This document shows, piece after piece, positions 5,082-60,979 of a stretch of DNA of 64,000 nucleotides. The position numbers and the translations under genes are program-made. The first letter of the stretch is position 1, and every line of letters starts with the position of its first letter. The notes below the pieces were generated by a model. It was not told the origin of the DNA. It was given only the letters and a program-made list of their open reading frames with translations, and ran no database searches. The stretch lies in IMG/VR virus record IMGVR_UViG_3300049855_000348, positions 156,490-220,489 of that record; one strand, given 5' to 3'.

Positions 5082-5109
5082 AGTATAGCGACTAAAAGGT
5101 CGCTGTCAA
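5082..5109 (-). promoter_or_regulatory. Early promoter with embedded palindromic operator
   Basis: TTGACA-GCGACCTTTTAGTCGC-TATACT-6 nt-ATG. Confidence 0.85.
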
Positions 5110-5111
5110 CA

Positions 5112-5246
5112 CCCTATCCGAACAGCGCCTTGAGGCGGAACAGGAAGCTCGGCTTCGTGACGGGGTAGCGGCCAGCGGAGTTTGAGGTGTTACGCACGGT
5201 GTGTTCCTACTAGGGGGAGGCGTTCTGTTTTCTAGAAAATAGAATG
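5112..5246 (+). ncRNA. Candidate small structured RNA followed by a hairpin
   Basis: ORF-free intergenic region with nested stems CCCTA/TAGGG, GGAACA/TGTTCC, CGTGAC/GTTACG, CGCC/GGCG, GAAGC/GCTTC and a hairpin at 5221-5246. Confidence 0.35.
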
Positions 5247-5248
5247 GG

Positions 5249-5461
5249 TTAGCGACCACGTGGGGATGGTTCGCCGTCCTTCTGGACGTAGGGGGCGATC
5301 TTCACACCCGGATTCCAACGTTTCGCAAACGCCGCCTTGTTTCTCTCCCAATGGGCAAGAGCAGCCTCTTCACCCCGTTCGCTTGCGAGGTATTCGTAGA
5401 TCAAGCCATCGCTGACGTTGACGTAGAGGTGGACGAGAGGGAGTTCGGCGGTGGTGCTCAT
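5249..5461 (-). CDS. Hypothetical early protein (leaderless)
   Basis: 70 aa; ATG 6 nt after TATAAT. Confidence 0.75.
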   Translation of the reverse strand: MSTTAELPLVHLYVNVSDGLIYEYLASERGEEAALAHWERNKAAFAKRWNPGVKIAPYVQKDGEPSPRGR

Positions 5462-5467
5462 GCCCAG

Positions 5468-5495
5468 ATTATAGCGACACTTTAGTCTAAGTCAA
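5468..5495 (-). promoter_or_regulatory. Early promoter with operator
   Basis: TTGACT-TAGACTAAAGTGTCGC-TATAAT-6 nt-ATG. Confidence 0.85.
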
Positions 5496-5530
5496 CACCT
5501 TCCTCAACACCGGTCATGGCTACATAAGCC

Positions 5531-5707
5531 ATGAACCTCAAGCCCCTCGTCGAAGATACCTGTTCCGGCAACGTGGCTGCATTTACCCGGGCTCGCATTG
5601 GTGGCGGGGATGACAAGGTCGTCCGCAAGCCTGTAGAAAAGAAGAAGGGTACCGGACTCAAGCCCGGTACCCTCTTCGACTTCGTCAACGGCTACAAGAA
5701 ACGCTAG
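5531..5707 (+). CDS. Small basic protein (58 aa), putative internal head protein
   Basis: MNLKPLVEDTCSG...GYKKR; TACATA hexamer 4 nt upstream; below the ORF-track cutoff. Confidence 0.6.
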   Translation: MNLKPLVEDTCSGNVAAFTRARIGGGDDKVVRKPVEKKKGTGLKPGTLFDFVNGYKKR

Positions 5708-7080
5708 CCGGCAAGCTGACCGGTTGCCTTGAGCAATCCGTTCAGCAGATCTTCAGCCGAGGCCGAGGCACCTGCCGGGGGTGGATTGCTGACCGGTGGA
5801 GCCTGCTGGACCGACGATTGAGCCACGACCGGGGGCACAACAGGGTTCGTCGATACCGAGGGCGGTACGGGCATCCCAGCGTCACTGCGGATGGCAGCCT
5901 TGATGTCAGAGACCTTCTCCAGGTCCTCCAACTTGGGCATGCTCACCCGGGTTGATGGCAGGGTAGCAGGAGCCGAGTGCAGGGGCGGCGGCACATGCTG
6001 GTGGCTGGTGGTGGGCTCGGCTGGCTTGAAGACCACAACCGGTTCCTGAGGCTGTGCGGTCGGACCATTGATCGGCACCCCACCCTCCTTGAACAAGCTC
6101 TGCTGGCCTTTGCTGGCGTTCTCCTTGGCGATCACGGCGTCAGACTCGGCGATGAGCGCCTTGTATGCCTTCTCAGCGTCGGTGATGTTCTTGGCCCCGG
6201 TGACGGTCTCGATCTGCTCCGGAGTGAACATGCTACGGCTGTTCAACTCGTCGACCATCTTTTTGAGATCGGCGTCGATCTGTTCCTTGGTGCGACGACC
6301 ACGCTGAACCGTTCCAGAGATCGGCGGCTTGCTGCTACCAACACCAGTCAGGATCTGCTTGGTATCGGTGGTGACACCGGCTGTCTGAGCGGGTGATCCG
6401 AGGCTGGGCGGGGTGGCCGGCTGACCGTTGTTGCTGAAGGGGAGCGATGTCACCTCGTAGATGTCCGGCACTTCAATGTCGATCCAGTCGACCGCATCCA
6501 TCATCATCTCCATCGCCCAGTCGGTCGAATAGAGAGGGAAACTACCAAGCTGACGAGCCGCGATCTCCGCTTCGGCCAGGATGACACCGAACACATAGCG
6601 ATCAGGAACCTGACCAGCACCGCCGATGGTGCCGAGTTTGATGAGACGACCGGCGATATCGGCATCGTAGTCCTTCACCACACGGTTTTTCACGTCGGTG
6701 CCGGAGAGTTCCAGCGTCGCAAAAGTGGCGGTTACCAGACCAAACGAGCAATCCCACTTCACGCGGGCATTGAGTGATGCCATCAGACGCTGTTGGTCAC
6801 TGACCATCAGGCAACCTTTGTCGTTGCCCTCAAGTTTGTTCTTCAGGTACCAACCCCAGACCTCGTTCGAGTTGATGTTCTGGACTCGACTGGTGTTGTC
6901 CAAGCTGATGATGTTCTTCTCAGCATCGAACTTGAAATTCTTGTGGTTGGCCTGGATCGCCTTGAGCAGGTACTTCACCGGCACGCCGATGACACGCGCC
7001 ATCTCGAAGGCGGTGAACTTCGGCAAGACATCCTTGCTGAGCTTGATCGACTCGACGATGGATTCACGAGTGATTTTCAT
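5704..7080 (-). CDS. Hypothetical protein, possible N-terminal HTH and Pro-rich C-terminal tail
   Basis: FTAFEMARVIGVPVKYLLKAI is HTH-like; low-complexity tail. Confidence 0.8.
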   Translation of the reverse strand: MKITRESIVESIKLSKDVLPKFTAFEMARVIGVPVKYLLKAIQANHKNFKFDAEKNIISLDNTSRVQNINSNEVWGWYLKNKLEGNDKGCLMVSDQQRLMASLNARVKWDCSFGLVTATFATLELSGTDVKNRVVKDYDADIAGRLIKLGTIGGAGQVPDRYVFGVILAEAEIAARQLGSFPLYSTDWAMEMMMDAVDWIDIEVPDIYEVTSLPFSNNGQPATPPSLGSPAQTAGVTTDTKQILTGVGSSKPPISGTVQRGRRTKEQIDADLKKMVDELNSRSMFTPEQIETVTGAKNITDAEKAYKALIAESDAVIAKENASKGQQSLFKEGGVPINGPTAQPQEPVVVFKPAEPTTSHQHVPPPLHSAPATLPSTRVSMPKLEDLEKVSDIKAAIRSDAGMPVPPSVSTNPVVPPVVAQSSVQQAPPVSNPPPAGASASAEDLLNGLLKATGQLAG

Positions 7081-7881: not shown

Positions 7882-8526
7882 TTACCTGTAAATGGTGATT
7901 TTAGCGGCAACATCAAGATCGTCCTTACGAACGCCCAAAGTGCCAGGAATGGGTTTCGCATAGGCAACCAGTGATATCCGTCCTAAGACATAGGCGTCAG
8001 CGATATTGTTGTCGCTGGATTCAAAAGTCCAGCGTTTGTAGACCCCGAGCATCACTTGGTCCTTCTCACACGTCCCTTTGCCGGTGGCGAACTTCTTCAG
8101 TCCATTGGTGCCACAGCAGGCGAAGTGCCAGTCGGTCCTGCTCATCATGATTCTGAAGTGCCAGCCCAGACCACCGAGCTTGGCCATCTGATGAGCTTGA
8201 GAGAAGGCGAAGTCTTCCATCACCGCACAGACCTTGCGACCAGCAGCGATCTCGGTGACAAACTTGTAGGTCTCACTGAACAAAGTGACGATGCGGTGGA
8301 CTTCATCCATCGGCGTCGAGCCGGCCTTGGTAGAGATCAGTTTCTGGCCAAGCAATGTGCCCTGGTCGTCAAAGATACAGACGCCAGTGCCGGTCATCGA
8401 CTGGTCGATGCCAACATAGACCCCACCCTTCACCCAGGGAGAGACTTGCACGCATGCGGGTACGAGGTTCTTTTTCTTAGCCACTGACACCCTTCCGTCG
8501 CGCCCATCGACGTTCGTGTTCGACAT
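7882..8526 (-). CDS. RuvC-like Holliday junction resolvase
   Basis: GIDQSMTGTG, MEDFAF, LKKFATGKG..KDQV and DNNIADAY carry the RuvC catalytic acidic residues. Confidence 0.85.
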   Translation of the reverse strand: MSNTNVDGRDGRVSVAKKKNLVPACVQVSPWVKGGVYVGIDQSMTGTGVCIFDDQGTLLGQKLISTKAGSTPMDEVHRIVTLFSETYKFVTEIAAGRKVCAVMEDFAFSQAHQMAKLGGLGWHFRIMMSRTDWHFACCGTNGLKKFATGKGTCEKDQVMLGVYKRWTFESSDNNIADAYVLGRISLVAYAKPIPGTLGVRKDDLDVAAKITIYR

Positions 8527-8737: not shown

Positions 8738-9360
8738 CAGACGTGGTTGTAGCCGTCCCCACCGTTATCGACGATGCTCTTGGCAGCAACGTTGATCGAT
8801 GGAGCGGTACCAGACTTCGGCCAGTTGGTGTCGAGATCGCGGTTGGCGATATCGGTTTCGTTGACGATGAACGGACGGATCAGACGTTCAGCCCATCCAC
8901 CGACTTCAACCTGAGCCAAGGTGGCTGACTTGTAGAGGATCATGCGACCTTCGTCGCCGACCTGAGCACCTGCGGACATGATCTTTTCGATCACACCGCC
9001 ACCAACGACAGCGCGGGTCGTGTAGGTGTACTCGGATGACGACTTGAGGAACGTGTAGTCCTGGTTCGGTTTGAGACCACTGTTGGTCGGCACGAAGCCA
9101 GAGCCATGCACCGTCGGGACACGCAGAACTTTTGACGGCACCTCTTTCTGCGCTGTCAGACCCGGCTGAACAACGAAGTTCATGTCCCCGATGGTGAACT
9201 GGAGGACCTGATTCTTCTGGTTGTTCTGCGTCTGGAGTGCAGGGTTCTGATTCACTGCCGTCGAATCAAATGGATAGGTGGCGAGCATGGCGTGTTTCTC
9301 CACGCCTATGTAGCTGGACGCAGCGAAAATCAGAGTCAGGAGGGCCAGGGTCCTGATCAT
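8737..9360 (-). CDS. Hypothetical protein with an N-terminal hydrophobic segment
   Basis: MIRTLALLTLIFAASSYIG; overlaps the upstream stop. Confidence 0.7.
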   Translation of the reverse strand: MIRTLALLTLIFAASSYIGVEKHAMLATYPFDSTAVNQNPALQTQNNQKNQVLQFTIGDMNFVVQPGLTAQKEVPSKVLRVPTVHGSGFVPTNSGLKPNQDYTFLKSSSEYTYTTRAVVGGGVIEKIMSAGAQVGDEGRMILYKSATLAQVEVGGWAERLIRPFIVNETDIANRDLDTNWPKSGTAPSINVAAKSIVDNGGDGYNHV

Positions 9361-12300
9361 ACCGGTTTGATCGCCCAGGAGGTCTGCTCATCGACCATGG
9401 TGGCCACGATGGTACCAGCACGGCTGGAACCCGGCACATCGGCGTGGGTGATGACGAAGATCCGCTTCACCCGATTGACCATGGAAGCGATCAGATCCTG
9501 CACGGCACGGCGACCCTTCACGTCGAGGGCGTCGAAGACTTCGTCGAGGGCCAAGAAGCCGGCACGGTGCCGAGAACGCTGACGGGCCAACTCGAAGATC
9601 GAGAATAGCGCAGCCAGATCGGTCCACTTGCGCTGACCGCCTGAGCGCCGGCCATACCGTTCCTGGTAGGTCAGATCCGAGTTGAAGGTGAGGGTCATCT
9701 TCCCGCCGAAGTGTTGTCCGATGTAGGACTGGACGACGAGATTGAGTTGTTTCACGCTCTGGTCAAGCAGGAAACCCCTCATGGAGCCCTTAGCGGCAAA
9801 AGCCTTGTCCCAGAACGTGATGTAAGCCGATTTCAGGTCCAGGGCATGCGCCTGAGCCTTTGAGGTTTCCATCGCAGCGAACGCAGCCTGTCGGTCGGCG
9901 ACCAAACGGTCCTTGGCGATCTTCAGAGCGGCAGCCGGGTCGGTGGCGGTGAGGTTGCGCTCCTCTTGAGCCAGGGCCGCCTCGGTAGCGGCTCCACCAG
10001 CCTCCAGGGCCGACTTTTCTTGCAGGAGGGCCGAGAGTTCCCCGGTGAGGCGTTTGTGCTCATCCTGAGCCTTCTGGAGGGCTTCTTTGGCCGAGACGAG
10101 ATCCGTCACCGCCTGTGATGCCAGGATCAGATCGGCCTTGGTCCGGTAGGCACTCATGATGGCAAGTAGACCGTCGAGGATCCGCTGGAAGCCGGAGGCA
10201 GTGATGATGTCCTCCAGCCTCTCCGGCATGGGCAGGCACTGGTTGGCCTGTTCTGCGAATCGAGCATCGACCTGCTGCCGGCGTACGGCGATGGCCTGCA
10301 ACCGAGCTTCCATGTCCGGCAGGGACTTGGTCAGCGTTTCGAGCACGGTCTTGGCCGCAGCCAACTGGGCCAGGGTGGCGAGACCCTTGAGGGATTCATC
10401 AGCCTGAACTCGCAGTGCCTGGGCTTCGCTGATGAGTTTGGTCTGTTCGGCTTTGTAGGTCCGGTACCCTGCTCGCAGGCTCTCCAACTCAGCGTTGAGA
10501 CCCTTCACCACGTTGACCATCGATTCGCCATTGATCGAAGTCAGACACGTCGGGCAGTCACCACCAGTGGTGAGCTTTGAGAGCTTTTCAGCCTTCTGTG
10601 AGATCGGCGTTGCTTGCGTGGTGGTGGCCTCGGCCTTCGCACCTTCAGCCGCAGCCAACTGATCTTTCTGTGTTGCCTCTTGGCGGAGGACGTTGGCACG
10701 TTCATTGGCAGCAACCACTGCCGCTTCCTGTTTCAGTGCCGCTTCGAGACCAGTGATGCGATCACGAACAGTGCCGATCTCCGACTTGAGGATGTTCTCC
10801 TCGTTGGTGATGTTGTTGTGATCGATGCAGCGGGAATTCCAAAGCGATTGAAAGCGAACGATGTTCTTGTTGGTCTCTTCCGCCTTGTCGACGTTGGCCT
10901 TCGCCTCGACACGGATCGCCTCGACACCACCAGAGAGTAGTTGGACCTTCTCGGTCGCAGCCTTCACCACATCGTTGCTGTACTGAATAGTCTGCTCACC
11001 ACTGGCTTCTGCATACATCAAACGTTCGCGTTCTTGACGCATCTTGACCTGATGGTCGTTCTTGCGCTGGGCCACTGAACTCAACATCACCTGATGATTC
11101 TTTTCAGCGTCGAGGATCTGCGTTTCGATGGCAGAGATCTGCGCTGCTGAGCGTTCGATTTCACCAGCACGAACCTTCTGAATGTTGGCCTGTTGTTCGA
11201 GTTGATCACTCATGAGTTTCTTCAACTCACGAGTCTTCTCCAGGTAAGCGTCGAAGCGTTCGAGACCCAGCATCTCTTCGATCATGGCACGACGTTTCTT
11301 CTCGTCTCCGGTCATGAAGTTGGCCGTCACGTTTTGGCCCATGATGTAGGAACGACTGTAGGTCTCACGGTCGATGCCGATGAGATCGATGATCATCTTC
11401 TGGGTAGCTTTCGGATCACCCTTCTCGAATGACTCTTGATAGACGCCATCCTTGTAGACCTTCACACCAGTACCGCCGAGGTCGTGGTACTTGCGGAAGC
11501 GTTCGATGCTCCAGCCGTTGGCATGGTTCACCCGAACGTAGCAGTTCTTCCCCTTGCCGGTGAACTGAGGGTCGTAGACCACATCGTCAGCCTTCATCTC
11601 ATCACGGATGGTCTCGCCGAAGTAGCACCAGAAGATAGCTTCGAGGAACGTGCTCTTGCCGGCACCGTTCTCACCTTCGAGGTACCACACGCCTGGACGC
11701 AGGTCATCAAAATTGATGGTGATCTTTTCCTTCACACCAAGGAAGCCCTCAAGAGTCAGGCTGGAGACTTCACCATCGAAAGCCATGCCACCCTTTTCGG
11801 CATCTTGGAAACGTGAATTCACCTCAGCGATGATCGATTTGCCGAACTGGATGGTGATGTCCACATCCAATTGACTATCGCCAGTGATGACCGACTTCAC
11901 GAAGGGCTCGACGAGGCCAGCGGCGGAGGTGGCTTCAACACCGAGGACTTCAACCTCCTGATCACGAATCGCTTTCTCGATGACCGACTCTTTGCGTACC
12001 GAGATGACACCGGCAGCTTCGAGCTTCAGTTGCAGGGCTTCGTGCTGCTCATCGGTGACGAGGTCGTCATAGATGACAGTGACGAAGCAGTCCTTGAGTG
12101 TGGTCAGATCCTGCGGCAGATCGCTGACACCGAGAACCTTGAAGGCATCGTGGTGTGGATTGAGGATGAACCGGTCGTTACCGGTATCCATGTCGAGGAC
12201 CATGATACCACGCTGGTCACCGGCATCGCCGAAATTGAACTGGAGGGGTGAGCCGCAATAGGTCACCCGGTGATCCATGCGCTGGAAGACGTGGAAGTGG

Positions 12301-12848: not shown

Positions 12849-12854
12849 CATCTC

Positions 12855-12882
12855 ATCCTAGCGACATTTTGGTCTAAGTCAA
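12855..12882 (-). promoter_or_regulatory. Early promoter with operator (Mre11-Rad50 gene)
   Basis: TTGACT-TAGACCAAAATGTCGC-TAGGAT-6 nt-ATG(12848). Confidence 0.8.
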
Positions 12883-17161: not shown

Positions 17162-17189
17162 ACGATGGCGTCAATAGTGTCGCTGTCAA
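17162..17189 (-). promoter_or_regulatory. Degenerate early promoter/operator
   Basis: TTGACA-GCGACACTATTGACGC-CATCGT. Confidence 0.6.
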
Positions 17190-18772: not shown

Positions 18773-18777
18773 GTGAT

Positions 18778-20205: not shown

Positions 20206-20233
20206 AGTATCGCCTTTCGGTGCGGTCGCTCTG

Positions 20234-20261
20234 TGTATAGCGACAAAAAGATCGCGCACAA
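20234..20261 (-). promoter_or_regulatory. Degenerate early promoter/operator
   Basis: TTGTGC-GCGATCTTTTTGTCGC-TATACA. Confidence 0.55.
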
Positions 20262-20274
20262 TAAAAATCAGGCG

Positions 20275-20601: not shown

Positions 20602-20639
20602 GGCTGGCAGACTACTGGCTTGTAGCACCCACACAAGCA

Positions 20640-21400: not shown

Positions 21401-21416
21401 ACACCCAGAGGAAGTC

Positions 21417-22034
21417 ATGCAAACGATCTACGACATCGAAACCATTGCCGTTCTCGATGCCAAGTCGATCAACCGTCGTTCCTTCCGATCTGGACCAGCC
21501 TCACGCATCCTTTCAATTTACGATGACCCTGAGATCCTACGGAAGCGACTTGAAGCGAATGTCCCCTGCCCGCTCAAAATGGCGATTGAAAAAAATGGTT
21601 ACGATCCCGCCAATCCTCCGAAGTTGAAGCGCGGTCATTACATGGATCCGAAGGAGTTGTTCTACCGCACCATGAAAGTTCAGATGGCTGGTGGAATCGA
21701 CAAAGCGGGTCGTGATGGAGAACGTTTCATCGAACTGCTGACCCTGCTGGCGAATGGTTATATGGGTCGCATCATGTTCAAGGATACCGGCTCGATGGCC
21801 AATCTCACTGAAGACATGGTGCAAGAAGCTATCACCAAGTGTGCGATGATCGTCATGCGCTTCAATCCCTGGGACCCCCGCGCCACCAAACCCACTCTCA
21901 ATAACGCTTTCGCCTATTTCACCACGGTTATCCGCAATCGCTTCTATGAAACACTCACTTGCCCATTGGTCGGGTCGGATGTGTTCCTCGAAGATCTCAA
22001 AACCGAAAACCAGTCGATCGGTGATTTGATTTGA
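21417..22034 (+). CDS. T4 gp55-like late sigma factor
   Basis: EDMVQEAITKC...RFNP...NAFAYFTTVIRNRF matches the gp55/sigma region 2 pattern. Confidence 0.8.
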   Translation: MQTIYDIETIAVLDAKSINRRSFRSGPASRILSIYDDPEILRKRLEANVPCPLKMAIEKNGYDPANPPKLKRGHYMDPKELFYRTMKVQMAGGIDKAGRDGERFIELLTLLANGYMGRIMFKDTGSMANLTEDMVQEAITKCAMIVMRFNPWDPRATKPTLNNAFAYFTTVIRNRFYETLTCPLVGSDVFLEDLKTENQSIGDLI

Positions 22035-22058
22035 CTTAGCGACAATTTGGTCTAGATT
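22031..22058 (+). promoter_or_regulatory. Early promoter with inverted operator, upstream of primase
   Basis: TTGACT-TAGCGACAATTTGGTC-TAGATT. Confidence 0.7.
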
Positions 22059-29003: not shown

Positions 29004-29077
29004 AACCTAGCATGGTTGGTGTGGAATACAATAGCGATCAAAATGTCGCTTGATTTTGAAGTCTGATTTGGTACACT
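29004..29077. promoter_or_regulatory. Divergent promoter pair with a central operator
   Basis: Minus: TTGTAT-16-TAGGTT-6-ATG. Plus: TTGATT-16-TACACT-6-ATG. Operator AGCGAT-CAAAAT-GTCGCT at 29033-29050. Confidence 0.7.
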
Positions 29078-29083
29078 GCGGGC

Positions 29084-29194
29084 ATGTTCAAACTCCCCAT
29101 CCTGGCAGTCCTCCTCATCGCCACCTTCGCCTGCGGTCTCTACGTGGGCCACAAGCTCGGCTTCGCCCACGCGCAGAAGATCCAGACCAAGTGA
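29084..29194 (+). CDS. Small single-pass membrane protein (36 aa)
   Basis: MFKLPILAVLLIATFACGLYVGHKLGFAHAQKIQTK; leaderless; stop overlaps the next GTG. Confidence 0.65.
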   Translation: MFKLPILAVLLIATFACGLYVGHKLGFAHAQKIQTK

Positions 29195-31477: not shown

Positions 31478-31504
31478 TTGACAGCGACATTTTGGTCTTA
31501 TATT
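31478..31504 (+). promoter_or_regulatory. Early promoter with operator
   Basis: TTGACA-GCGACATTTTGGTCT-TATATT; ATG is 34 nt from the first T, as in the other leaderless copies. Confidence 0.75.
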
Positions 31505-31511
31505 TCCAATC

Positions 31512-35203: not shown

Positions 35204-35458
35204 ATGACTGACGATTCCCTTACCCAACAACACCTCGGTCACGTGATCACCGCTGACAAACGTCAGTATCGTGTCACGACAGAGACCGGGGATATCCTTC
35301 ACGAAGTCAATGATCGGTGTTCCTCTGCGCCGTTGACGAATGTCCAGAGAGGAGTCATGTGGTTGGAAAACCACCTTGGCATTGCCAAAGACGATGACGA
35401 CGAGGTTGGTGGTCTGGCAGTTGACATCGACCAGAGTGTCGCTATTGTTCAGGGATGA
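35204..35458 (+). CDS. Hypothetical protein
   Basis: 84-aa ORF. Confidence 0.6.
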   Translation: MTDDSLTQQHLGHVITADKRQYRVTTETGDILHEVNDRCSSAPLTNVQRGVMWLENHLGIAKDDDDEVGGLAVDIDQSVAIVQG

Positions 35459-36231: not shown

Positions 36232-37161
36232 CCTACGTCCACCTGAACATCCCAAGGTACGATCGGGTGTGGCTGCAACGCCATCCCTGTCCGTACTGCA
36301 AGAAGGAACGCTTCTTTCTCGGCTGTTCCCAGGAATGGTACGGCTTCACCAAGACCTGTCTCCGGTGTGGGGACTCATTTACAGACGAAGGTTGGAACGC
36401 TCGACCGTTTGAACGGGCGTGGCGGAAGAAGGCAGTCGAATCAGCAAGGAGAATCTGGCATGCGTGGCGGAAGAATGAATCCAAAAACCAGGGACCAGAT
36501 CGCCGAGATCCGACCCAAGCTATTTCTTCTTCTCCAGGAGAAGGGGGCCATGTCGACGCTCGACATCTGTGAACTTCTGAAGATCGACCCCAATGTCCTG
36601 GGCACTGTGTTGCGCCACAGTCAGATGACCTTCGATGTGAAGGATATCCAAGCAAACAACCTGAAGCGTCGGATGATCTCACTGAAGTCAGCCAATGCCT
36701 GCTCGGTGGTCTGATTCTTGACTTCATCCAGGTTGTCGCTATTCTCGTCCGCGTGATCACCATCGATACACCAGTCGTGATCGTCGGCGACAAGCTCGGC
36801 GAGATGTGTCTTCTCGATCTCCCCAAGATGATCGGACAGAAGGCGGTTGTCGAATCTGCACAGGGCGAAGGTTTCTGGTGGGTCAGGCTGGAAGACAACA
36901 ATCGGATTCTGCTTCATCAGGACGAACTGAAGGAATTCAATGCACCCTGAACCCAATCTCGGCTCCAGCCAAGTCAAGATCCTCAAGGATCTGAAGAAGT
37001 TGGAATCAGGGTATGGTGAAGTGCCTGGAGATCATCTGGCCAGAGCCCTCGACAAGCTCTACAACAAGGGCTACGTCAAGTTCCAGACCGTGAACGGAAA
37101 AAAGGTCTGGGCCATCACCAAGCAGGGCGTTGAAGCTCTCGATCGTAAAGGACTCTCATGA
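36228..37161 (+). other. Small ORFs: zinc ribbon 36228-36572, wHTH-like 36475-36714, 36753-36950, wHTH-like 36940-37161
   Basis: CPYC...CLRCG; MSTLDICELLKID; LDKLYNKGYV...WAITKQG. Confidence 0.55.
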
Positions 37162-52817: not shown

Positions 52818-52845
52818 AGTATAGCGACCTTTTGGTCGCTGTCAA
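52818..52845 (-). promoter_or_regulatory. Early promoter with perfect operator
   Basis: TTGACA-GCGACCAAAAGGTCGC-TATACT. Confidence 0.88.
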
Positions 52846-54148: not shown

Positions 54149-54176
54149 AGTATAGCGACCTTTTTGTCTAAGTCAA
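54149..54176 (-). promoter_or_regulatory. Early promoter with operator
   Basis: TTGACT-TAGACAAAAAGGTCGC-TATACT. Confidence 0.85.
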
Positions 54177-55414: not shown

Positions 55415-56441
55415 TTATTTTCTCATGTGCGCCGACAGACCCCACCAGCAGAGCGCATCGCGGATGCGGAGGGCGTTCTCGATGTGGTGACGGCGGTTCT
55501 CGTTTTTCATCCTGGCCATCGCACGATGGACGATCAGAAAACGTGCCATGCCGAAGGCGTGGTCGAGGCCGACTGTGTAGCACTTGATCTTGATGTCGCA
55601 GTGATTGGTCGCACAGACGATCTTGCGACCGTGGTATGGCTCGAACCCAGCCGACCGATGCCGCTCGTCGATGCCTGCGGTGTAGATCTCACGCAGACGA
55701 TCTCCGGCAGCATGCTGGAGCGTGAAGCCAGCATCGGCTTCTAGGTGTGGGAAGAGGGTGGCGGTGGCGTTCATGCCGACCTCATGGGCCAGGGTTGGGG
55801 ATTCTCCGCCTTGGGCGGGAGCTTGCCGGCTGCGACGCAGTCGGGGCACACGTCGTACTCGGTGCGGTAGCGGGCGAACTTGTTGCGCTTGCCACGGATG
55901 GGAGCGGTCTCAACCGGTCCACAGGCGGCAAGGTAGCCCCGGGAGTCGTAGGAACCGCTTGGCCACTTGGTGACCACGACTTTGTTGGTGCAGCCTTCGC
56001 AATCGCATTTGCGATGTAGGATGCCGGTGTCTCGGTTCTCGATGATCATCATCCTTCTCCGACTTGAACGAGTTTGCGACGGTAGGTGGGCTTGCGCTTC
56101 TTCTTGGGCGGCGAGTAGCGGTAAGCGCGGCGTTCGTCGCCAAGACTGATCTGAGTGAGGTCGTAGGCGTCGGCGATGACCTGACGTTCAACGAGGTGGT
56201 GTTCCAGGCGGACGCTGCGACCGTTCTTGTGGGCAGGAACTTCCAGCGTTGGCCGGTAGTTGCCAGCGGCGTTCAGGACATCGGTCAGATCTGAGAAACC
56301 GGTATGAAATCCGACCAGACGATCGAGGACTTTCAGGGCGGCGAGGGCAGCAGCGAGGCGCTTGCGACCACCCGGGAACTTGGTGACCTTGTCACCCTCG
56401 ATGATCTGCACTTCGTTGACGGTCGTGTCGTTGTTGCTCAT
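55415..56441 (-). other. Three hypothetical ORFs (55415-55774, 55771-56052 Cys-rich, 56049-56441)
   Basis: ATGA-coupled; the first is leaderless from the 56448 promoter. Confidence 0.65.
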
Positions 56442-56447: not shown

Positions 56448-56475
56448 AGTATAGCGACCAATTTATCTAAGTCAA
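56448..56475 (-). promoter_or_regulatory. Early promoter with operator
   Basis: TTGACT-TAGATAAATTGGTCGC-TATACT-6 nt-ATG. Confidence 0.85.
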
Positions 56476-56478: not shown

Positions 56479-58000
56479 CTACTTGGTCTCTTCGCGTTCC
56501 TTGGCAGCGGTGGCGATTTTTCCCATTTCACGCTGAACGGTTTGCAAGTTGTTCCCGTGGTGGGCTACTATCGCCATCGCGGTGGTATCTTCCCGCACAT
56601 AGTGACCAGCCAGACGAAGGTGCTCCTGAGCCGCTGCGATGTGACGCTGAGCGTCGCGGTACTCACGAGAGGTTAGTTGGTGGGCCATGGTGTTCTTTTC
56701 ATGTGAGAAGTTTCATTTCCCGCAAGGCGTTCTGAGCCGTGGTGTGCATCTCGAAACGAAGATCTGGATTTCCACGAACACGTTCAGATCGATGGTTGGA
56801 GATAGATCTCAGGGCTGCGATGGCGGTCTGTAGTTGCTTGGCCATGTCTTCGATGTCGATGAACTTCACGTAGCTGCCGTCGTTCATCGGTTCGAGATCA
56901 TAGCGTGGACCACCTTCGCAGTCGCCGACTCCGTAGCGTTGGAGAGCCATGAATTATTCCAGTTCGATCCAAATCGAGACATTCACTTCTGGCGTACCGC
57001 CAACGAGGTCGTTGTGATATTTTAGGACGTGTTCGTGTTCGACCTTACGGACGATGCCGTAGACCGGCCCTCTTTCTTCATGGTAACAAATGTGCTCGTC
57101 GATTTTCGGAATCGAGGCACCGGCTGGCCATGTGAGCATGGTCAGGATATCAGAGTCGTTTGGATTTTCCTTTTTGTAATGGTAGATGGCGATGGATTGA
57201 TTGCTGAGCATTGGTTCTTTCCTTACGAATGCTTACAAATTATCTACATACGACTGAAGCGCGTTGTCTCTCTGCTCTGCGGTGTCATATGGGCCATGCT
57301 TGTTGCACCACACTTCATCCCAGAACCAGAACTTGCCATCCTCTTTGAATCGAGGATCTGAGGAATCACCCTTTGCCTTCTTGGTCTCTTCGGCGTTGCG
57401 GTATTCCTTGAGTCCCTTCTCAGCCGCAGCACAGCGCATGCTGATGGCATTGATGCCATTGGTCAGATCACCACCGAAGGGACCGTTGGGATCTCCGAAG
57501 CCGCCGAGGGCTTGTCTGGCGCTGTCGATCTGTGCTCGCATACATTTGACGCAGCAGCCACAGGGGCCATCACCGTCTTCCATGCAGCCGACACCACGGA
57601 GCATGTCGATCTCTGCCTGTTTTTGCTCGTTGCCATGCCTGAGTTTTTGCAATTCTTCCTTGGTGAAGGCATTGACCTTGAGCAGGAAGAAATCAGGTAG
57701 GCCGGTGTCGACGTTGGGGACATCTGGATAACCAACGACCTTGGCGAAGTTGACCAACATGCACTTGCCCTGATAGAACAGTTCGTCGTACGCCTTCTCG
57801 GCGTCGGTGACCTGGGTGAAGTCATGCTCGTTGGCGACCATGAACATGGAGATCTTTTCGAGGAGTTTGAAGTCCTTCGCTCGTCCGATCTCCCCCATGC
57901 ATTCACGCAGTAGCTCGGATCCAGCCTTGATGCGTCCGAGCAGATGTCGGCTGTATTCTTGAAGTTTGGCGATCTCGTCAGCCTGTGTGGATTCTGTCAT
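56479..58000 (-). other. Hypothetical ORFs (56479-56688, 56699-56950, 56954-57211, 57233-58000)
   Basis: Tightly packed minus-strand ORFs. Confidence 0.65.
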
Positions 58001-58007: not shown

Positions 58008-58035
58008 TAATTAGCGACCTTTTAGGTGCTATCAA
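58008..58035 (-). promoter_or_regulatory. Degenerate early promoter/operator
   Basis: TTGATA-GCACCTAAAAGGTCGC-TAATTA. Confidence 0.55.
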
Positions 58036-58038
58036 TCG

Positions 58039-59450
58039 TTATTTGATCGGTTTGATTGGATAGTGGGCGATCGGAATGATCGTGGCCACACGGCAGATGG
58101 TGCGCTTCGTTCCTGGTTTCAGGAAATACCAGCACACCGATCTGGTTCCGTTGTTGGCGATGGTGACCTGCCAACCCTTTTTTTGCAGTTGCGGTCTGAT
58201 GCGTAGCAGAATATCCAACACTGCCTCAGCCGTCGGTGTGAAGGTCGGCGTGGTCTTGGCCGCAAGTTGTTCCAGATCACGGATGGTTTTGATGTAGGTC
58301 ACGACTGCTCCGCGATGGTGTAGGTGAGGCTGTTGATGTTCTCGTATCCGGCTTTGGTGAGGGCGGCGAGGATCTTCTCCTGAGTTGATACCGAGAAGAC
58401 TTCAACGTCTGGATTCCAGTAGTCGCTGCCGGTCTCTCCAGCTTTCTTGCCATAGAAGGTGCAGAGAAAGGTGCGTTCCTTGGCCTCGAATTGTTCCAGC
58501 ATTCTCGCCACGTTGAAGTGGGTCATCCAGCACCAGCCGTTGACCCCGTCGATGAATGTCGTCGGGTAGATGCCGGTGCGAGGGCTGTGCGGCGAGATGA
58601 TAGATGCCAGGGCGTCTTCGTACTGGCCACAGAAGACCCCTGAGGGATCAGTAGGATCCACGATGCTCAGTAGGAACTCTCCATTGCTGTTGATCTGCAA
58701 CGGCTCCTTGAACTTCTTCTCGAAGCAGGCAGCGAGGTGACGCAACCCCTCGGCCAGCTTCTGTTCACGGGCGATGGCAACCTCGATAGGGCTGCCTTTG
58801 AAGTCATGGTGATGATAGGTCATCAGATCACTTTGAGGCTGAGGTGTAGGTGCGGCAGGTGTGCTCGCCATTGGCGCTGCGGCGTTCTTCGATGCGGGTG
58901 GTCACGGTGCGGAGCATGCCGTTCCACGTGGTGCGGACGGTCAGTTCCCAATCGATGGAGAACTTCCGATCCGGGCTGGTCTCGTTCCAATTGGCGATCT
59001 CACCCTTGGTACGCCACCGCTTGTCGTTGCCGTTGACCGCAAAGAGGGTCGGTCCCTCTTTGGACGCGCACATCTCGATGAACTGCTCGACGATGGTTGG
59101 ATCGGCTTCGACCTTCTTGCCACGGGCGCGGATCTGTTCAGCGGCGGTGGGCATTTGCAGCGTCTTCATTTGAAGATCCTCTCACCGGTGATGATGTCGA
59201 TGGCGTTGGGTCCGAGGTTGGCGCGGATCTCGCACAACTCCTCAGCACTGCGCACACGGGGCTGAGCCCGGTAGGCGGCGAGGAAGGCGTCGATCTCGGC
59301 ATCCAGGGCGGCCTTGTGCTTGACCCGGTCATAGCCAGCCGGCGCATTGGCGTCCAGGCAGTCCATGGGGACGCAGTGGTCGTTCTCGACCCAGCGGAGG
59401 ATACCCTTCTCATCGATCAGGGCTTCGGCGCGGTACGGGCTGTTGTTCAT
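58039..59450 (-). other. Hypothetical ORFs (58039-58302, 58299-58823, 58828-59169, 59166-59450)
   Basis: Coupled ORFs; the first is leaderless. Confidence 0.65.
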
Positions 59451-59456
59451 GCCCGA

Positions 59457-59484
59457 AGTATAGCGACCATTTTGTCGCTGTCAA
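59457..59484 (-). promoter_or_regulatory. Early promoter with operator
   Basis: TTGACA-GCGACAAAATGGTCGC-TATACT-6 nt-ATG. Confidence 0.88.
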
Positions 59485-59530
59485 CAACTGGTTGGTGGTA
59501 TTCGTCTGGTAGCCCCGATATACATAGAAC

Positions 59531-60949
59531 ATGCTCCTGATCGACATCGCTGACAGCACTCTTCCAAGTCACCTCCTGTTGGCACAGGCAGTTATGGAAG
59601 CCGTTGGCAAGGCAAAAGAGATGCCGATGGGCTGGAAGCATGTCTCCAAGTACCTGACCGAAGAAGAGAAAGGGAAGATGCGGAAGGACACCGCACAGAA
59701 GTTGATCAACATCTTCCGTTCCCTGCCCAACGAGAAGGAGTTCGAGGCATCAGCCCGTGCCGGCCAAGCCAAGAAGGGCTGGTACGCAGCCTCCGCCCAG
59801 GCTCTGATGGAAGTCTTCGGACCTGACACCCCTCGCTTTGCCGCCTTGCTGGCCAGCCTCTCCCCTCAGGTGTCGGTGCAGGAGAACCTGCGCAATGCCA
59901 TCCGTTTCTGGGAGAAGTGGATCGAAGCTGGTCGCCCAACCCATGGCAAGGAACTCGACGCTGTTGGCCATGCAGCAGTCGGCCAGCCACGCTGGGAGAA
60001 GATGAACTGGAAGCAGAACGTTCAGCGTTCGATGTTGCACGAAAGCCCCGAGAAGGTTGTCCTGTCTTCGGGTGGCATGGCTGGCAAGGTCGACAGCTTC
60101 CGTGCCAATCTCCTGGGAGATCTCAGCCGCGTCACCAACGACGCCTGGATGGCCCACTTCGCCAACATCGATCAGGCTCTCTTCTCCAGCCCCGCTGGCT
60201 ACCTCGCCATGACTGCCCGCGTCCGCAAGGTCGCTGCCAAGATGGGCTGGTCACCGGCTGAGGTGCAGGAGACCGTGTGGAGCTTCTTCAAGGCTCTGCA
60301 CGAGAAACAGAATCAACAACATCAGGGTCGCAAAACGCTGGAGAAGCTGGGTCATGACGACGTGAACTCGTCTGAAGATTTCGCTGATCTGCTGGTCCGC
60401 GACGAAGAGGTGAAAAATGCACTCAAAAGACTCCGGGATCGAGGGCTCGTTGGAGAACCTACTCCGCGCTCTAGAGACGGAGGGCAAGATCCAGGATCAA
60501 GCCCACAATCCGCAGCAGCGCAAAGAGGTCTTGCTGGCAGTCTTGGGCGGGTCGCCGACCGAGCAGAAGCCCTCAAGCACCGACAAGACCTCCAAGAACT
60601 CGCCACCCGTGGCTACCACTTCCCCAACGCCACCAACATCAAGTACGGGCACCACCACGTTACCTTCACGCTAGTCGATCCACGTGAGATCGCCGAGTGG
60701 AAGGAAAAGATGCGCAAGCCGGAGGACACCTACTCGCTGATCCTTGGTCGCAAGGATGGCAAGTGGGATCGTTTGTCTGGTGTCACGCATGGCATGCCGA
60801 CGGTGACCGACAACGGTACCGATGTCACCATCACCCTGCCATTCGCTGAACGTGAGAAGATCAAGCCAGCAGCGATTGATGCCGAGCGTTGGCGCTACGT
60901 TGATGCGAAGAAAATGGAACGTGCCAAGAAGTTGAACAAGGCAGTTTAG
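59531..60949 (+). CDS. Putative DNA-glycosylase-fold (DUF7178-like) protein, late-expressed
   Basis: GWY...AALLASLSPQ.SV..N...KVDSFRANL.GD..RVTNDAWM...Y...PAEVQETVW; family assignment from memory. Confidence 0.55.
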   Translation: MLLIDIADSTLPSHLLLAQAVMEAVGKAKEMPMGWKHVSKYLTEEEKGKMRKDTAQKLINIFRSLPNEKEFEASARAGQAKKGWYAASAQALMEVFGPDTPRFAALLASLSPQVSVQENLRNAIRFWEKWIEAGRPTHGKELDAVGHAAVGQPRWEKMNWKQNVQRSMLHESPEKVVLSSGGMAGKVDSFRANLLGDLSRVTNDAWMAHFANIDQALFSSPAGYLAMTARVRKVAAKMGWSPAEVQETVWSFFKALHEKQNQQHQGRKTLEKLGHDDVNSSEDFADLLVRDEEVKNALKRLRDRGLVGEPTPRSRDGGQDPGSSPQSAAAQRGLAGSLGRVADRAEALKHRQDLQELATRGYHFPNATNIKYGHHHVTFTLVDPREIAEWKEKMRKPEDTYSLILGRKDGKWDRLSGVTHGMPTVTDNGTDVTITLPFAEREKIKPAAIDAERWRYVDAKKMERAKKLNKAV

Positions 60950-60951
60950 TG

Positions 60952-60979
60952 TTGACTTAGACCAAATGGTCGCTATAAT
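60952..60979 (+). promoter_or_regulatory. Early promoter with operator
   Basis: TTGACT-TAGACCAAATGGTCGC-TATAAT-6 nt-ATG. Confidence 0.88.

What the first reader, a model, noticed from the sequence alone, without database searches (positions are those of the whole stretch)
5082..60979. Genome-wide early regulon: sigma70 promoters whose 16-bp spacer is a GAC-N6-GTC palindromic operator
Seen: near-identical 28-bp elements at 5082, 5468, 12855, 52818, 54149, 56448 and 59457 (minus strand) and 31478 and 60952 (plus strand), with degenerate copies at 17162, 20234 and 58008. Consensus is TTGAC[A/T]-16 bp-TATA[C/A]T, in which AGCGAC or TTAGAC - N6 (A/T-rich) - GTCGCT overlaps both boxes. At 22031 the operator is inverted relative to the promoter, and at 29033 it stands alone between two divergent -35 boxes, so it behaves as an independent binding site. 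Established: the usual optimum sigma70 spacer is 17 bp, and dimeric regulators binding within the spacer can repress or remodel it (MerR family does so on long spacers). Inference: one phage-encoded dimeric regulator switches all early cassettes plus Mre11-Rad50 and primase. Candidate HTH genes are 18778-19146, 19816-20205, 36475-36714, 36940-37161 and 5704-7080.
Basis: partly seen in the sequence, partly recalled or inferred. Interest (0 to 1): 0.9.

Follow-up and report, generated by a model that had tools for sequence, protein, structure and literature searches.

The report
Phage early promoters carrying a built-in palindrome
An uncultured 220-kb T4-like phage from freshwater sediment drives about 40 early transcription units from near-identical host-type promoters whose spacer is a conserved palindrome, probably the binding site of an unidentified switch protein, and most of these promoters sit so that the messenger would begin at the start codon.

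Summary
The motif gTG-TTGAC(T/A)-(TA/GC)GACC-N4-GGTCGC-TATA(C/A)T occurs about 42 times in the 220-kb genome. Thirteen copies in standard orientation lie in the window, plus two inverted and one stand-alone. None occur in shuffles. Nearly all copies are intergenic and point at a gene.

The palindrome is selected in its own right:
- It is kept at orthologous sites in four relatives (47-78% SbcCD identity).
- More distant relatives have similar leaderless promoters without it.
- A stand-alone copy centred at -42.5 of another leaderless promoter is conserved in a relative.
- So is an inverted copy before the primase gene.
- Its hairpin is weak and shows no covariation, so the constraint is on sequence, not structure.

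Best reading: an operator for a dimeric, probably phage-encoded, regulator that shuts off early promoters. No binder has been identified. A conserved 73-aa winged-helix protein (36940-37161) is the best candidate.

The closest known kinds are the PeSL promoter/stem-loop cassettes of T4-type phages and the dispersed operator regulons of phages P1, L5 and phiC31. There are no transcript or binding data.

The parts
5082..5109 (-). Early promoter with perfect palindrome (TTGACA-GCGACCTTTTAGTCGC-TATACT). ATG at 5075 lies 6 nt after the -10 box (93-aa ORF), so the transcript would be leaderless.
5468..5495 (-). Early promoter (TTGACT-TAGACTAAAGTGTCGC-TATAAT), leaderless onto the 70-aa ORF 5249-5461. 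The ORF downstream differs between relatives, as if it were a swapped cassette.
12855..12882 (-). Promoter of the Mre11-Rad50 (SbcCD) fusion gene. It has a weak -10 (TAGGAT), an intact palindrome and a leaderless ATG. It is orthologous to L018:888 and L019:9967.
17162..17189 (-). Degenerate copy downstream of DnaB, with -35 box and left half-site only (TTGACAGCGAC) and no -10 box. A further ATAGCGAC half-site lies 15 nt upstream of its -35 box. The TTGACAGCGAC part is conserved in L019, L020 and L021.
20234..20261 (-). Promoter with a degenerate -35 box (TTGTGC), palindrome GCGATCTTTTTGTCGC and -10 box TATACA. A 28-nt leader runs to the operon 19816-20205 / AAA protein / sigma4-like protein / DnaB. 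The orthologue is L019:2607.
22031..22058 (+). Plus-strand promoter TTGACT-N16-TAGATT with the asymmetric operator in inverted orientation. It lies about 200 nt upstream of the primase gene and antisense to a conserved 72-aa ORF. The same inverted arrangement is present in L019 (860-940).
29033..29050 (.). Stand-alone palindrome AGCGATCAAAATGTCGCT, spanning -51 to -34 (centre -42.5) of the rightward leaderless promoter listed next. On the minus strand it fills the spacer of a weak leftward promoter (-10 box TATTGT). The identical geometry is found in relative L029 (27-44, ATG at 78).
29050..29194 (+). Promoter without a spacer palindrome (TTGATT-N16-TACACT-GCGGGC-ATG) together with the leaderless 36-aa transmembrane-peptide ORF it precedes (ATG at 29084). 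The homologous 46-aa peptide and its promoter are conserved in L029.
31478..31505 (+). Promoter with the operator inverted (TTGACA-GCGACATTTTGGTCTT-ATATTT). It is leaderless onto the 114-aa ORF 31512-31856.
35421..35448 (+).
36718..36745 (+). A GTG 7 nt after the -10 box starts the 65-aa ORF 36753-36950, which is followed by the winged-helix gene and dCTP deaminase. It is conserved in L028:375, L030:4574 and L031:7356.
36940..37161 (+). Best candidate for the palindrome-binding protein: a 73-aa PadR/MarR-like winged helix. It is conserved next to dCTP deaminase in L028, L029, L030 and L031.
36475..36714 (+). Second small winged-helix-like protein (79 aa). It is conserved in the closest relative (L028) only, and the evidence for the fold is a weak lead.
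52818..52845 (-). Early promoter with the best palindrome (AGCGACCAAAAGGTCGCT) and a 32-nt leader with a Shine-Dalgarno sequence to ORF 52168-52785.
54149..54176 (-). Early promoter with a 24-nt leader that carries a Shine-Dalgarno sequence, running to ORF 53549-54124.
56448..56475 (-). Early promoter, leaderless onto the 130-aa ORF 56049-56441.
58008..58035 (-). Weak copy (TTGATA-GCACCTAAAAGGTCGC-TAATTA). An ATG 7 nt after the -10 box starts the 255-aa ORF 57233-58000.
59457..59484 (-). Early promoter with a perfect six-base-arm palindrome, leaderless onto the 94-aa ORF 59166-59450.
60952..60979 (+). Early promoter with the highest weight-matrix score, leaderless onto the 67-aa ORF 60986-61189.

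Best explanation
This is the early-promoter class of a distant T4-like myovirus that has no RNA polymerase of its own and uses the host sigma-70/sigma-A holoenzyme.

Each unit consists of:
- a -35 box, TTGAC(T/A);
- a 16-bp spacer;
- a -10 box, TATA(C/A)T;
- in about 60% of copies, the start codon exactly 6-7 nt after the -10 box, so the transcript would start at the A of ATG (leaderless).

The spacer, together with one base of each box, forms an imperfect palindrome, (A/T)(G/T)(C/A)GACC-N4-GGTCGCT, spanning about -29 to -12.

I infer that this palindrome is an operator for one sequence-specific dimeric protein, most likely phage-encoded. Bound there, the protein would compete with RNA polymerase and shut the roughly 40 early units off together once it has accumulated. 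One conserved copy is centred at -42.5 of a promoter that has a weak -35 box and no spacer palindrome. From that position the same protein could instead act as an activator.

Shown by the sequences: the motif, its genome-wide intergenic placement, the start-codon geometry, and the conservation and separability of the palindrome.

Inferred: host-polymerase use, the transcription start sites, protein binding, and the sign of regulation. The binder has not been identified. The 73-aa winged-helix protein at 36940-37161 is only the best candidate.
For: Motif and its significance.

Placement: intergenic and co-oriented with genes.

Every TTGAC-N15-18-TAnnnT match in the genome except one (at 41710, where a palindrome is displaced onto the -10 box instead) carries at least the right-hand half of the palindrome in its spacer.

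Start-codon geometry: 23 copies have ATG or GTG at exactly +6 after the -10 box and 3 at +7, each opening an ORF of 57-1163 aa.

No phage RNA polymerase was detected, and a gp55-like late sigma is present.

The palindrome is selected:
- It is retained at orthologous promoters of L018-L021 (SbcCD identity 47-78%). At most of these places the surrounding non-coding sequence has diverged.
- In the G+C-richer relatives the arms are mostly the perfect AGCGAC/GTCGCT.

The palindrome is separable from the promoter:
- Relatives L022-L024 have TTGACA-N16/17-TAnnnT promoters without it, and in L022 one has its ATG 6 nt after the -10 box.
- The inverted copies are at 22031 (conserved in L019) and 31478.
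- The stand-alone copy spans -51 to -34 in both the window and L029.

It is not a structural hairpin. Most copies fold at 0 to -6 kcal/mol, and Watson-Crick pair counts are no higher than expected if the two arms varied independently.

It is not a host genomic motif. Only 3 single chance-level hits were found in 185,579 species genomes.

A conserved small winged-helix protein exists in every palindrome-bearing relative that could be examined.
Against: - There are no transcript 5' ends and no binding data of any kind.
- No recognisable repressor family is encoded.
- The right arm GTCGC directly abuts the -10 box. It is the most invariant block even where the -10 hexamer is poor (TAGGAT, TAAGGG, and TAAGAG, TAAAAG in relatives). 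It could therefore be an extended -10 element read by the polymerase itself.
- The A/T-rich centre is oriented with the promoter: 22 copies are A-rich and 6 T-rich on the promoter strand. A symmetric dimer alone does not explain this.
- In the window's genome, apart from the copy at 41710 that overlaps a -10 box, only one copy clearly stands outside a promoter spacer.
- The palindrome-lacking relatives could not be checked for presence or absence of the winged-helix gene.
- Repression versus activation cannot be decided from sequence.
Confidence: 0.5

Rival explanations
1. Extended promoter with no separate binding protein. On this view the whole block of about 45 bp, including GTCGC just upstream of the -10 box and the A-tract in the spacer, is read directly by the unknown host's holoenzyme or by a phage-modified polymerase. 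The palindromic appearance would be incidental: GAC is part of TTGAC-like sequence, and GTCGC would be an extended -10 element.
For: - GTCGCTA is the most invariant block and persists where the rest of the -10 hexamer is poor.
- The centre of the palindrome has a promoter-relative orientation bias, 22 A-rich against 6 T-rich.
- Essentially every sigma-70-like promoter in the genome carries the palindrome.
- No classical HTH regulator was found.
- A conserved small protein with a weak sigma-region-4-like signal could modify the polymerase.
Against: - The same 18-bp element occurs inverted inside two promoters. It also occurs upstream of a -35 box at a spacing that is conserved in a relative.
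- That last promoter, and the promoters of relatives L022-L024, keep the same -35/-10/ATG geometry without GTCGC.
- In relatives the arms are perfect 6+6 inverted repeats. A polymerase-read element has no reason to be symmetric.
Confidence: 0.2
2. PeSL-type mobile regulatory cassette. As in the T4-type phages RB49 and phi1, the repeat would be an early promoter fused to a stem-loop. The stem-loop would attenuate read-through from upstream. Its roughly 45-bp identity would serve chiefly as a homologous-recombination site that shuffles ORFan cassettes.
For: - The phage is T4-like.
[quoted passage not shown] They flank variable ORFans (PMC2839356, PMC4122927).
- Here the ORFs just downstream of promoters 5082 and 5468 have no homologue, or only one, in relatives, while flanking genes are conserved.
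- The repeats aligned to other copies of the motif elsewhere in the same assembly contigs when public contigs were laid on the window.
Against: - The hairpins are weak: 0 to -6 kcal/mol in most copies, with a 3-4 bp stem. Only five copies reach -8 to -12 kcal/mol.
- No T-run follows the hairpin.
- There is no pairing covariation.
- The sequence of the arms, not just their pairing, is held constant across relatives with 47-78% protein identity, including at core replication genes.
- Recombination may therefore be a by-product rather than the selected function.
Confidence: 0.15
3. A hijacked host regulator. On this view the palindrome is the operator of a host transcription factor, for example a TetR-type dimer. 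From my own knowledge, Corynebacterium McbR binds TAGAC-N6-GTCTA. The phage would use such a factor to time or to condition early expression.
For: - No recognisable phage regulator family was found.
- The left half-site with its spacing, TAGAC-N6-GTC, resembles a known TetR-type operator. This is recalled from memory and is a lead only.
- Presence of the palindrome in one subclade and absence in another could reflect different hosts.
Against: - The composite motif is absent from 185,579 species genomes, apart from 3 chance-level hits.
- The host is unknown, so no host regulon can be examined.
- Putting about 40 early promoters under a host repressor would be costly for a lytic phage.
Confidence: 0.1

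Closest known systems
PeSL (promoter-early stem-loop) cassettes of T4-type phages RB49, phi1, PST and nt-1 (PMC2839356, PMC4122927)
   Same: Both are found in T4-like myoviruses. Both consist of dozens of near-identical, strong sigma-70-type early promoters. [quoted passage not shown] Both are associated with small variable ORFs. The authors of the PeSL work themselves speculated that a DNA-binding protein recognises the stem-loop.
   Different: - PeSL stems are G/C runs (GGGG...CCCC) that form stable hairpins and were shown to terminate transcription. Here the arms are a specific sequence (GCGAC/GTCGC, or TAGAC) with a stem of mostly 3-4 bp and no covariation.
- PeSLs have an AT-rich upstream region and a Shine-Dalgarno sequence. 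Here there is no UP-like region and most copies are leaderless.
- Here the element also sits before core genes (SbcCD, the DnaB operon, primase), and it also occurs inverted and stand-alone.
Dispersed operator regulons of temperate phages: P1 C1 operators, mycobacteriophage L5 gp71 'stoperators', phiC31 conserved inverted repeats (own knowledge); Cluster O mycobacteriophage 17-bp palindrome (PMC4351075)
   Same: In each case one short site is repeated 15-35 times or more over a phage genome, often at or near promoters. In Cluster O the site is a palindrome with an A/T-rich centre, and leaderless SigA-type promoters occur in the same genomes.
   Different: - Those sites are mostly separate from the promoter hexamers and many lie within or between genes. 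The L5 and P1 sites are asymmetric.
- Those phages are temperate, and for P1, L5 and phiC31 the repressor is known. Cluster O is a genome-sequence description whose palindrome has no known binder.
- Here the phage looks lytic. No integrase family appeared among the Pfam results shown for most of its proteins, although 13 weaker families of one batch were not listed.
- Here the site is built into the spacer of practically every sigma-70-type promoter, and no binder is known.
[quoted passage not shown]
   Same: The geometry matches: a dimer site centred near -20 would occlude the polymerase, and a site centred at -41.5 to -42.5 is the classical activating position.
   Different: Those are single loci with characterised proteins. 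Here the same site is used about 40 times, and the function is inferred from position only.
MerR-family spacer operators
   Same: A palindrome sits in the promoter spacer.
   Different: MerR promoters have over-long 19-20 bp spacers, which the protein untwists (own knowledge). Here the spacer is 16 bp and both hexamers are near consensus, so no such remodelling is needed. MerR did not appear among the Pfam families listed for the small proteins, although 13 weaker families of the first batch were not shown.
C-protein C-boxes of restriction-modification systems (PMC2175313, PMC2632904)
   Same: Both involve GAC...GTC-type palindromes at promoters that produce leaderless transcripts, bound by a small dimeric HTH protein that both activates and represses.
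   Different: C-boxes are paired GACT-N3-AGTC repeats bound by Xre-type (HTH_3) proteins. No HTH_3 match exists in this genome, the spacing here is N6, and no restriction-modification genes are adjacent.

Membership tests
Sigma-70/sigma-A-dependent early promoter | -35 box TTGACA-like and -10 box TATAAT-like, separated by 16-18 bp | tested here: met
   The -35 box is TTGACT in 23 copies and TTGACA in 15. The -10 box is TATACT in 18 copies and TATAAT in 4. The spacer is 16 bp. The generic promoter scan scores them at 10-11 matches of 12.
Sigma-70/sigma-A-dependent early promoter | Transcription starts 6-8 nt after the -10 box, made by host holoenzyme early in infection | not testable with these tools
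   The only RNA run that holds the phage gave four short contigs and no 5' ends. The host is unknown.
Leaderless mRNA | The start codon lies at the position expected for the transcription start, with no Shine-Dalgarno leader | tested here: met
   23 copies have ATG or GTG exactly 6 nt after the -10 box and 3 have it at 7 nt, each opening an ORF of at least 57 aa. This shows the geometry only; the 5' ends themselves were not observed.
PeSL cassette (T4-type phages) | A strong sigma-70-like early promoter repeated many times, preferentially next to variable ORFans | tested here: met
   The definition is taken from PMC2839356.
PeSL cassette (T4-type phages) | A stable stem-loop that acts as a transcription terminator or attenuator | tested here: not met
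   The minimum free energy is 0 to -6 kcal/mol in 28 of 33 copies. The 34-nt element averages -5.1 kcal/mol against -3.8 for shuffles. No T-run follows and there is no covariation. Termination itself was not assayed.
PeSL cassette (T4-type phages) | Recombination between copies that shuffles cassettes | tested here: inconclusive
   The ORFs downstream of 5082 and 5468 are replaced in relatives, with the break at the promoter. No recombination junctions were observed directly.
Operator of a dimeric repressor | Two-fold symmetric half-sites about one helical turn apart, conserved in sequence rather than in structure | tested here: met
   The site is GACC-N4-GGTC in most copies and AGCGAC-N6-GTCGCT in 6 copies here and in most copies in relatives. 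Shuffles give 0.05.
Operator of a dimeric repressor | The site occurs independently of the promoter context | tested here: met
   The stand-alone copy at 29033 is conserved in L029. The inverted copy at 22031 is conserved in L019, and 31478 is also inverted. An intragenic copy at 7999-8016 is conserved in L018, L019 and L020. These are few in number.
Operator of a dimeric repressor | A cognate DNA-binding protein binds the site and alters transcription | not testable with these tools
   Only candidates are available. The winged-helix protein at 36940-37161 gives an AF2 model with mean pLDDT 81 and matches MarR/RosR/PadR folds at TM 0.71-0.78.
MerR-type promoter | A 19-20 bp spacer and a MerR-family protein | tested here: not met
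   The spacer is 16 bp. No MerR family appeared among those listed for the small proteins. MerR models were not searched separately.

The most novel reading that the evidence does not exclude
A lineage of T4-like phages that lacks MotA/AsiA runs its early-to-middle switch with one small winged-helix dimer. Its operator is written into the spacer of every leaderless host-type early promoter, where binding at about -20.5 gives global shut-off. The same operator is placed at -42.5 of promoters with a weak -35 box, where binding gives activation. This would be a lambda-CI-like dual regulator used genome-wide by a lytic jumbo phage. The same repeats would double as recombination linkers for ORFan cassettes.
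Probability: 0.2. Interest if true: 0.75.

Novelty: new variant of a known kind. Interest (0 to 1): 0.6.

Why it matters
If the palindrome is a real operator, it gives a simple, sequence-readable logic for temporal control in an uncultured branch of the T4 superfamily. One site would be used about 40 times to switch off early genes.

The pervasive leaderless geometry, in both the early class and the presumed late class, is unusual for a T4-like phage. It also constrains the unknown host to organisms that translate leaderless mRNA efficiently.

Practically, the 45-bp unit is a compact, strong and presumably repressible promoter part. The motif also gives a way to annotate early genes in related metagenomic phages.

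Tried and rejected
- Nucleotide search and a protein search with the 1289-aa protein against GenBank phages found nothing. The terminase and portal proteins match only at 24-35% identity.
- An exact-motif scan of IMG/VR gave one unrelated AT-rich contig, L009.
- The terminase as a single query in IMG/VR found nothing.
- The metatranscriptome run X3 holds the phage, but only as four short contigs, so 5' ends could not be mapped.
- The motif scan of 185,579 species genomes gave 3 chance-level hits and no clue to the host.
- Pfam scans of 219 small and 24 large proteins showed no HTH regulator and no RNA polymerase. Six-frame searches for TetR_N and HTH_3 were negative.
- The sigma-region-4-like protein gave a confident AF2 model but no significant PDB match: E above 0.7 and TM about 0.3. 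The idea that it is a gp33-like late co-activator could not be tested.
- Searches for sliding-clamp families were negative or marginal.
- Searching IMG/VR and JGI metagenomes with the winged-helix alignment added only one 1.8-kb contig. Co-variation of protein and operator therefore could not be tested.
- Literature searches for the motif strings returned only unrelated primer sequences.
- A T4-type late promoter, TATAAATA, is absent from the genome.
- Rejected as readings of the motif: a MerR-type mechanism, because the spacer is too short; an ECF-type promoter, because the spacing between conserved blocks does not fit; and a terminator hairpin, because it is too weak.

Full report
**What the window is.** The window is bases 156490-220489 of a 220,489-bp IMG/VR virus record with 56% G+C and a 128-bp exact terminal repeat. 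Public runs place it in freshwater sediment.

Portal, large terminase and tail sheath match PHROG families. The nearest cultured relatives by terminase and portal share only 24-35% identity. They are Microcystis phage Mel-JY01, Flavobacterium phage immuto, Rhodothermus RM378 and the T4-likes. It is therefore a very distant T4-like myovirus with an unknown host.

The phage encodes:
- a Mre11-Rad50 fusion, a DnaB helicase, a Toprim primase and a UvsX/RecA-like protein;
- a DnaE-type polymerase and ThyX;
- 31 tRNAs and a tmRNA;
- a gp55-like late sigma at window 21417-22034.

No RNA polymerase was detected. Early transcription must therefore use the host enzyme. This is an inference.

**The observation.** In the window, TTGACNNNGAYNNNNNNGTCGCTA with up to 2 mismatches occurs 12 times, against 0.18 expected.

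Genome-wide there are 29 matches at up to 2 mismatches, against 0 for the reversed control. A weight matrix finds 42 sites above 8 bits, against 0 in a shuffled genome. Of the 42, 37 lie in the 10.4% of the genome that is intergenic, and each faces a gene.

The information content is high across the whole spacer, not only at GAC and GTC. The consensus is gTG-TTGACT-TAGACC-AAAt-GGTCGC-TATACT-nTGGGC-ATG-A. Conservation stops sharply about 8 nt upstream of the -35 box and about 8 nt downstream of the ATG.

All but one of the 31 TTGAC-N15-18-TAnnnT matches in the genome carry at least the right-hand half of the palindrome in their spacer.

- In 23 copies an ATG or GTG lies exactly 6 nt after the -10 hexamer, and in 3 more it lies at 7 nt. 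Each opens an ORF of 57-1163 aa, including the Mre11-Rad50 gene. That is the expected transcription start, so these would be leaderless mRNAs.
- The remaining copies have leaders of 24-33 nt with a Shine-Dalgarno sequence. These leaders begin with the same C-A-T as the leaderless ones, which fits a common start at that A.
- One copy (genome 86201) has no ORF and lies upstream of the tmRNA gene.
- No transcript 5' ends could be obtained, because the single metatranscriptome holding the phage gave four short contigs.

**Is the palindrome more than shared ancestry of the promoters?** Homologues of the Mre11-Rad50 fusion led to relatives.

Four relatives carry the same promoter with the same spacer at orthologous places: before SbcCD, before the DnaB operon, and after the conserved 58-aa gene. 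They are L018 at 78% identity, L019 at 58%, L020 at 57% and L021 at 47%. At most of these places the surrounding non-coding sequence has diverged. In the G+C-richer relatives the arms are mostly the perfect AGCGAC-N6-GTCGCT.

Three more distant relatives (L022-L024, about 40-45% identity) keep the synteny. They have TTGACA-N16/17-TAnnnT promoters, and in L022 one has its ATG 6 nt after the -10 box. None has the palindrome. This kind of promoter therefore works in the lineage without the palindrome.

**Separability of the palindrome from the promoter.**
- The majority form is asymmetric: TAGACC on the left and GGTCGCT on the right. That asymmetric unit occurs in the opposite orientation inside two plus-strand promoters, at 22031 (TTGACT-TAGCGACAATTTGGTC-TAGATT) and at 31478. 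The 22031 arrangement, between the late-sigma gene and the primase gene, recurs in L019 as TTGCAA-TAGCGACAAAGCTGTC-TAAGTT.
- At 29033-29050 the palindrome AGCGATCAAAATGTCGCT is not in a spacer. It abuts TTGATT-N16-TACACT-GCGGGC-ATG (ATG at 29084), which starts a 36-aa transmembrane peptide. It thus spans -51 to -34, centred at -42.5.
- In relative L029 the palindrome AGCGATCAAAGTGTCGCT (27-44) precedes TTGTTT-N16-TAGAGT-GCAGCC-ATG (ATG at 78). This starts a homologous 46-aa peptide at exactly the same spacing.
- A further perfect palindrome inside a conserved gene (7999-8016) is also kept in L018, L019 and L020.
- These conserved non-spacer copies are few, but they are the strongest argument that the 18-bp unit is recognised in its own right.

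**Structure or sequence?** The closest published architecture is the PeSL cassette of the T4-type phages RB49 and phi1. [quoted passage not shown] They act as terminators and as recombination linkers around ORFans (PMC2839356, PMC4122927).

The element here shares the promoter, the placement of the inverted repeat and the association with variable ORFs. The ORFs behind promoters 5082 and 5468 are replaced in relatives, while the neighbouring genes are conserved.

The stem-loop criterion fails, however:
- 28 of 33 copies fold at only 0 to -6 kcal/mol, with a 3-4 bp stem.
- The outer three positions do not pair in the majority form.
- Watson-Crick pair counts at every position are no higher than expected if the two arms varied independently.
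- No T-run follows the hairpin.

The constraint is therefore on the sequence of the arms. That points to a protein rather than a hairpin.

**Who binds?** This is unresolved.
- Pfam scans of 219 small proteins listed no HTH regulator, though 13 weaker families of the first batch were not shown. Six-frame searches for TetR_N and HTH_3 were empty.
- The composite motif is absent from 185,579 bacterial and archaeal species genomes apart from 3 chance-level hits. It is therefore not a host promoter type.
- 36940-37161 (73 aa) is a winged helix. Pfam PadR matches weakly at E 0.003. The ESM Atlas structure search gives TM about 0.8 to MarR/PadR proteins. The AF2 model has mean pLDDT 81 and matches MarR/RosR/PadR chains at TM 0.71-0.78. 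The protein is conserved directly upstream of dCTP deaminase in L028, L029, L030 and L031, with 20 invariant residues. In the window, L028, L030 and L031 it lies in an operon whose promoter carries the motif or its right half.
- 36475-36714 is conserved in the closest relative (L028) and is a weaker winged-helix lead. At that position the three more distant relatives carry no recognisable homologue of it.
- 18778-19146 has only a weak sigma-region-4-like signal. Its 74-aa core is conserved even in the relatives that lack the palindrome. Its model has no significant PDB match. It is more likely part of the general transcription or replication apparatus.
- 19816-20205 and 5704-7080 show no DNA-binding signal.
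- Whether the palindrome-lacking relatives also lack the winged-helix gene could not be tested, because the look-ups were exhausted.

**Mechanism proposed.** Host holoenzyme recognises the near-consensus -35 and -10 boxes and starts at the A of the start codon. A dimeric protein that recognises (A/T)(G/T)(C/A)GACC-N4-GGTCGCT binds from -29 to -12 and excludes the polymerase. This would switch off about 40 units together once the protein has accumulated. From -42.5, at the conserved promoter with a weak -35 box, the same protein could activate instead. All of this is inference from position.

**Points against the proposed mechanism.**
- GTCGC abuts the -10 box and is retained where the -10 hexamer is poor, so it could be an extended -10 element.
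- The A-rich centre is oriented with the promoter, 22 copies against 6.
- No binder is known.

I therefore give the operator reading 0.5, direct recognition by polymerase 0.2, a mainly PeSL-like recombination or attenuation role 0.15, and a host factor 0.1. These readings are not exclusive: repeats of this length would recombine whatever their primary function.

**A second promoter class.** The motif (C/G)TAGATA(A/G)(A/G) occurs 17 times as an independent site, 15 of them intergenic. Two further matches fall inside early-promoter copies. It precedes the portal, terminase and sheath genes and usually lies 2-4 nt before the ATG. It recurs in L020, L023 and L024. It is presumably read by the gp55-like sigma. 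The T4 late motif TATAAATA is absent. The phage thus appears to have a two-class programme of host-type early promoters and gp55-type late promoters, both largely leaderless.

**Verdict.** The element is best filed as a new variant of known kinds: T4-type PeSL cassettes and phage dispersed-operator regulons. It differs in having a sequence-specific palindrome built into the spacer of essentially all host-type promoters, together with leaderless starts.

Noticed in passing
window 63259 (-); genome-wide e.g. G000 147229, 145026, 106057, 103465, 50162, 8615; L020:3562, L023:19455, L023:15440, L024:2398: A second conserved upstream motif, (C/G)TAGATA(A/G)(A/G), occurs at 17 independent sites, 15 of them intergenic. 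It precedes the portal, terminase and sheath genes and usually lies only 2-4 nt before the ATG. It is probably the late promoter read by the gp55-like sigma (window 21417-22034). It is conserved even in the distant relatives that lack the early palindrome. The T4 motif TATAAATA is absent.
   Followed up: partly
G000 18491-23006 and 39879-40769 (L010, L011, L012); tmRNA at L014:5462-5837 (-): The phage carries 31 tRNA genes in two clusters and a one-piece tmRNA (Rfam RF00023, 97 bits; tag peptide DDHVEYGRIALAA). An early-type promoter at G000 86201 (-) has no ORF behind it and lies about 360 nt upstream of the tmRNA.
   Followed up: partly
window 20602-21416: This is an 815-bp stretch without a convincing ORF, between the 108-aa ORF and the late-sigma gene. 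It contains a very AT-rich segment (aaaatttataaaatttataaaagtcataaattacTTGACAaaatataat) and short repeats (caagacttacaagacttgcaagtctt). No Rfam family matches. It could be an origin of replication or a non-coding RNA.
   Followed up: partly
window 18778-19002 (-); L019:3160-3402, L020:711-953, L022:3947-4177, L023:1833-2084: A 74-80 aa protein lies immediately upstream of DnaB and is conserved in all relatives, with 29 invariant residues. It has a weak sigma-70 region-4-like signal and a conserved C-terminus, RRAFQ(R/K)QLRL. It might be a gp33-like late co-activator or a clamp- or helicase-associated factor. Its model had no significant PDB match.
   Followed up: partly
window 22052-22271: The primase gene (start at 22269, +) and a conserved 72-aa ORF (start at 22270, -) share a CATG, so their start codons overlap head to head with no room for a promoter. 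The same arrangement is present in L019 (671/672). The 22031 promoter would transcribe antisense through the 72-aa ORF to reach the primase gene.
   Followed up: partly
window 7999-8016 (inside gene 7882-8484, -); L018:5714, L019:14746, L020:14804: A perfect palindrome of the operator type (AGCGACAACAATATCGCT) lies inside a conserved 200-aa gene and is kept in three relatives. It could be an internal operator or could simply follow from protein conservation.
   Followed up: no
G000 41710-41745 (L012:1710-1745): A plus-strand promoter, TTGACT-N16-TACTAT, has its -10 hexamer as the 6-bp centre of an operator-type palindrome (AGCGAC-TACTAT-GTCGCC). This is a third placement of the palindrome relative to a promoter.
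   Followed up: no
window 3907-5461 versus L018:8276-9158, L019:17302-19405, L020:17366-19318: The small ORFs directly behind promoters 5082 and 5468 have no homologue, or a homologue in only one relative, while the flanking genes are 40-86% identical. The break in similarity sits at the promoter, as expected for cassette exchange between repeated promoters.
   Followed up: partly
G000 23897-24460 (-) (L011:3897-4460): A short (187-aa) phage-encoded protein has an RF-1 domain (E 1e-26) and a partial PCRF domain, so it resembles a release factor or ArfB. It lies next to the tRNA cluster. A weak RelA/SpoT-domain match also occurs among the small proteins of the first 114 kb.
   Followed up: no
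L023 (ENA contig k141_751382, 1-21217): This distant relative lacks the palindrome but carries another repeat, CTGAACAGCCTCCTG, about 7 times in 21 kb, counting both strands. The repeat was not examined.
   Followed up: no
window 9357-12851 (-): Mre11 (SbcD) and Rad50 (SbcC) are fused into one 1164-aa protein. The fusion is shared by about 20 metagenomic relatives, whereas L021 has the two as separate genes.
   Followed up: partly
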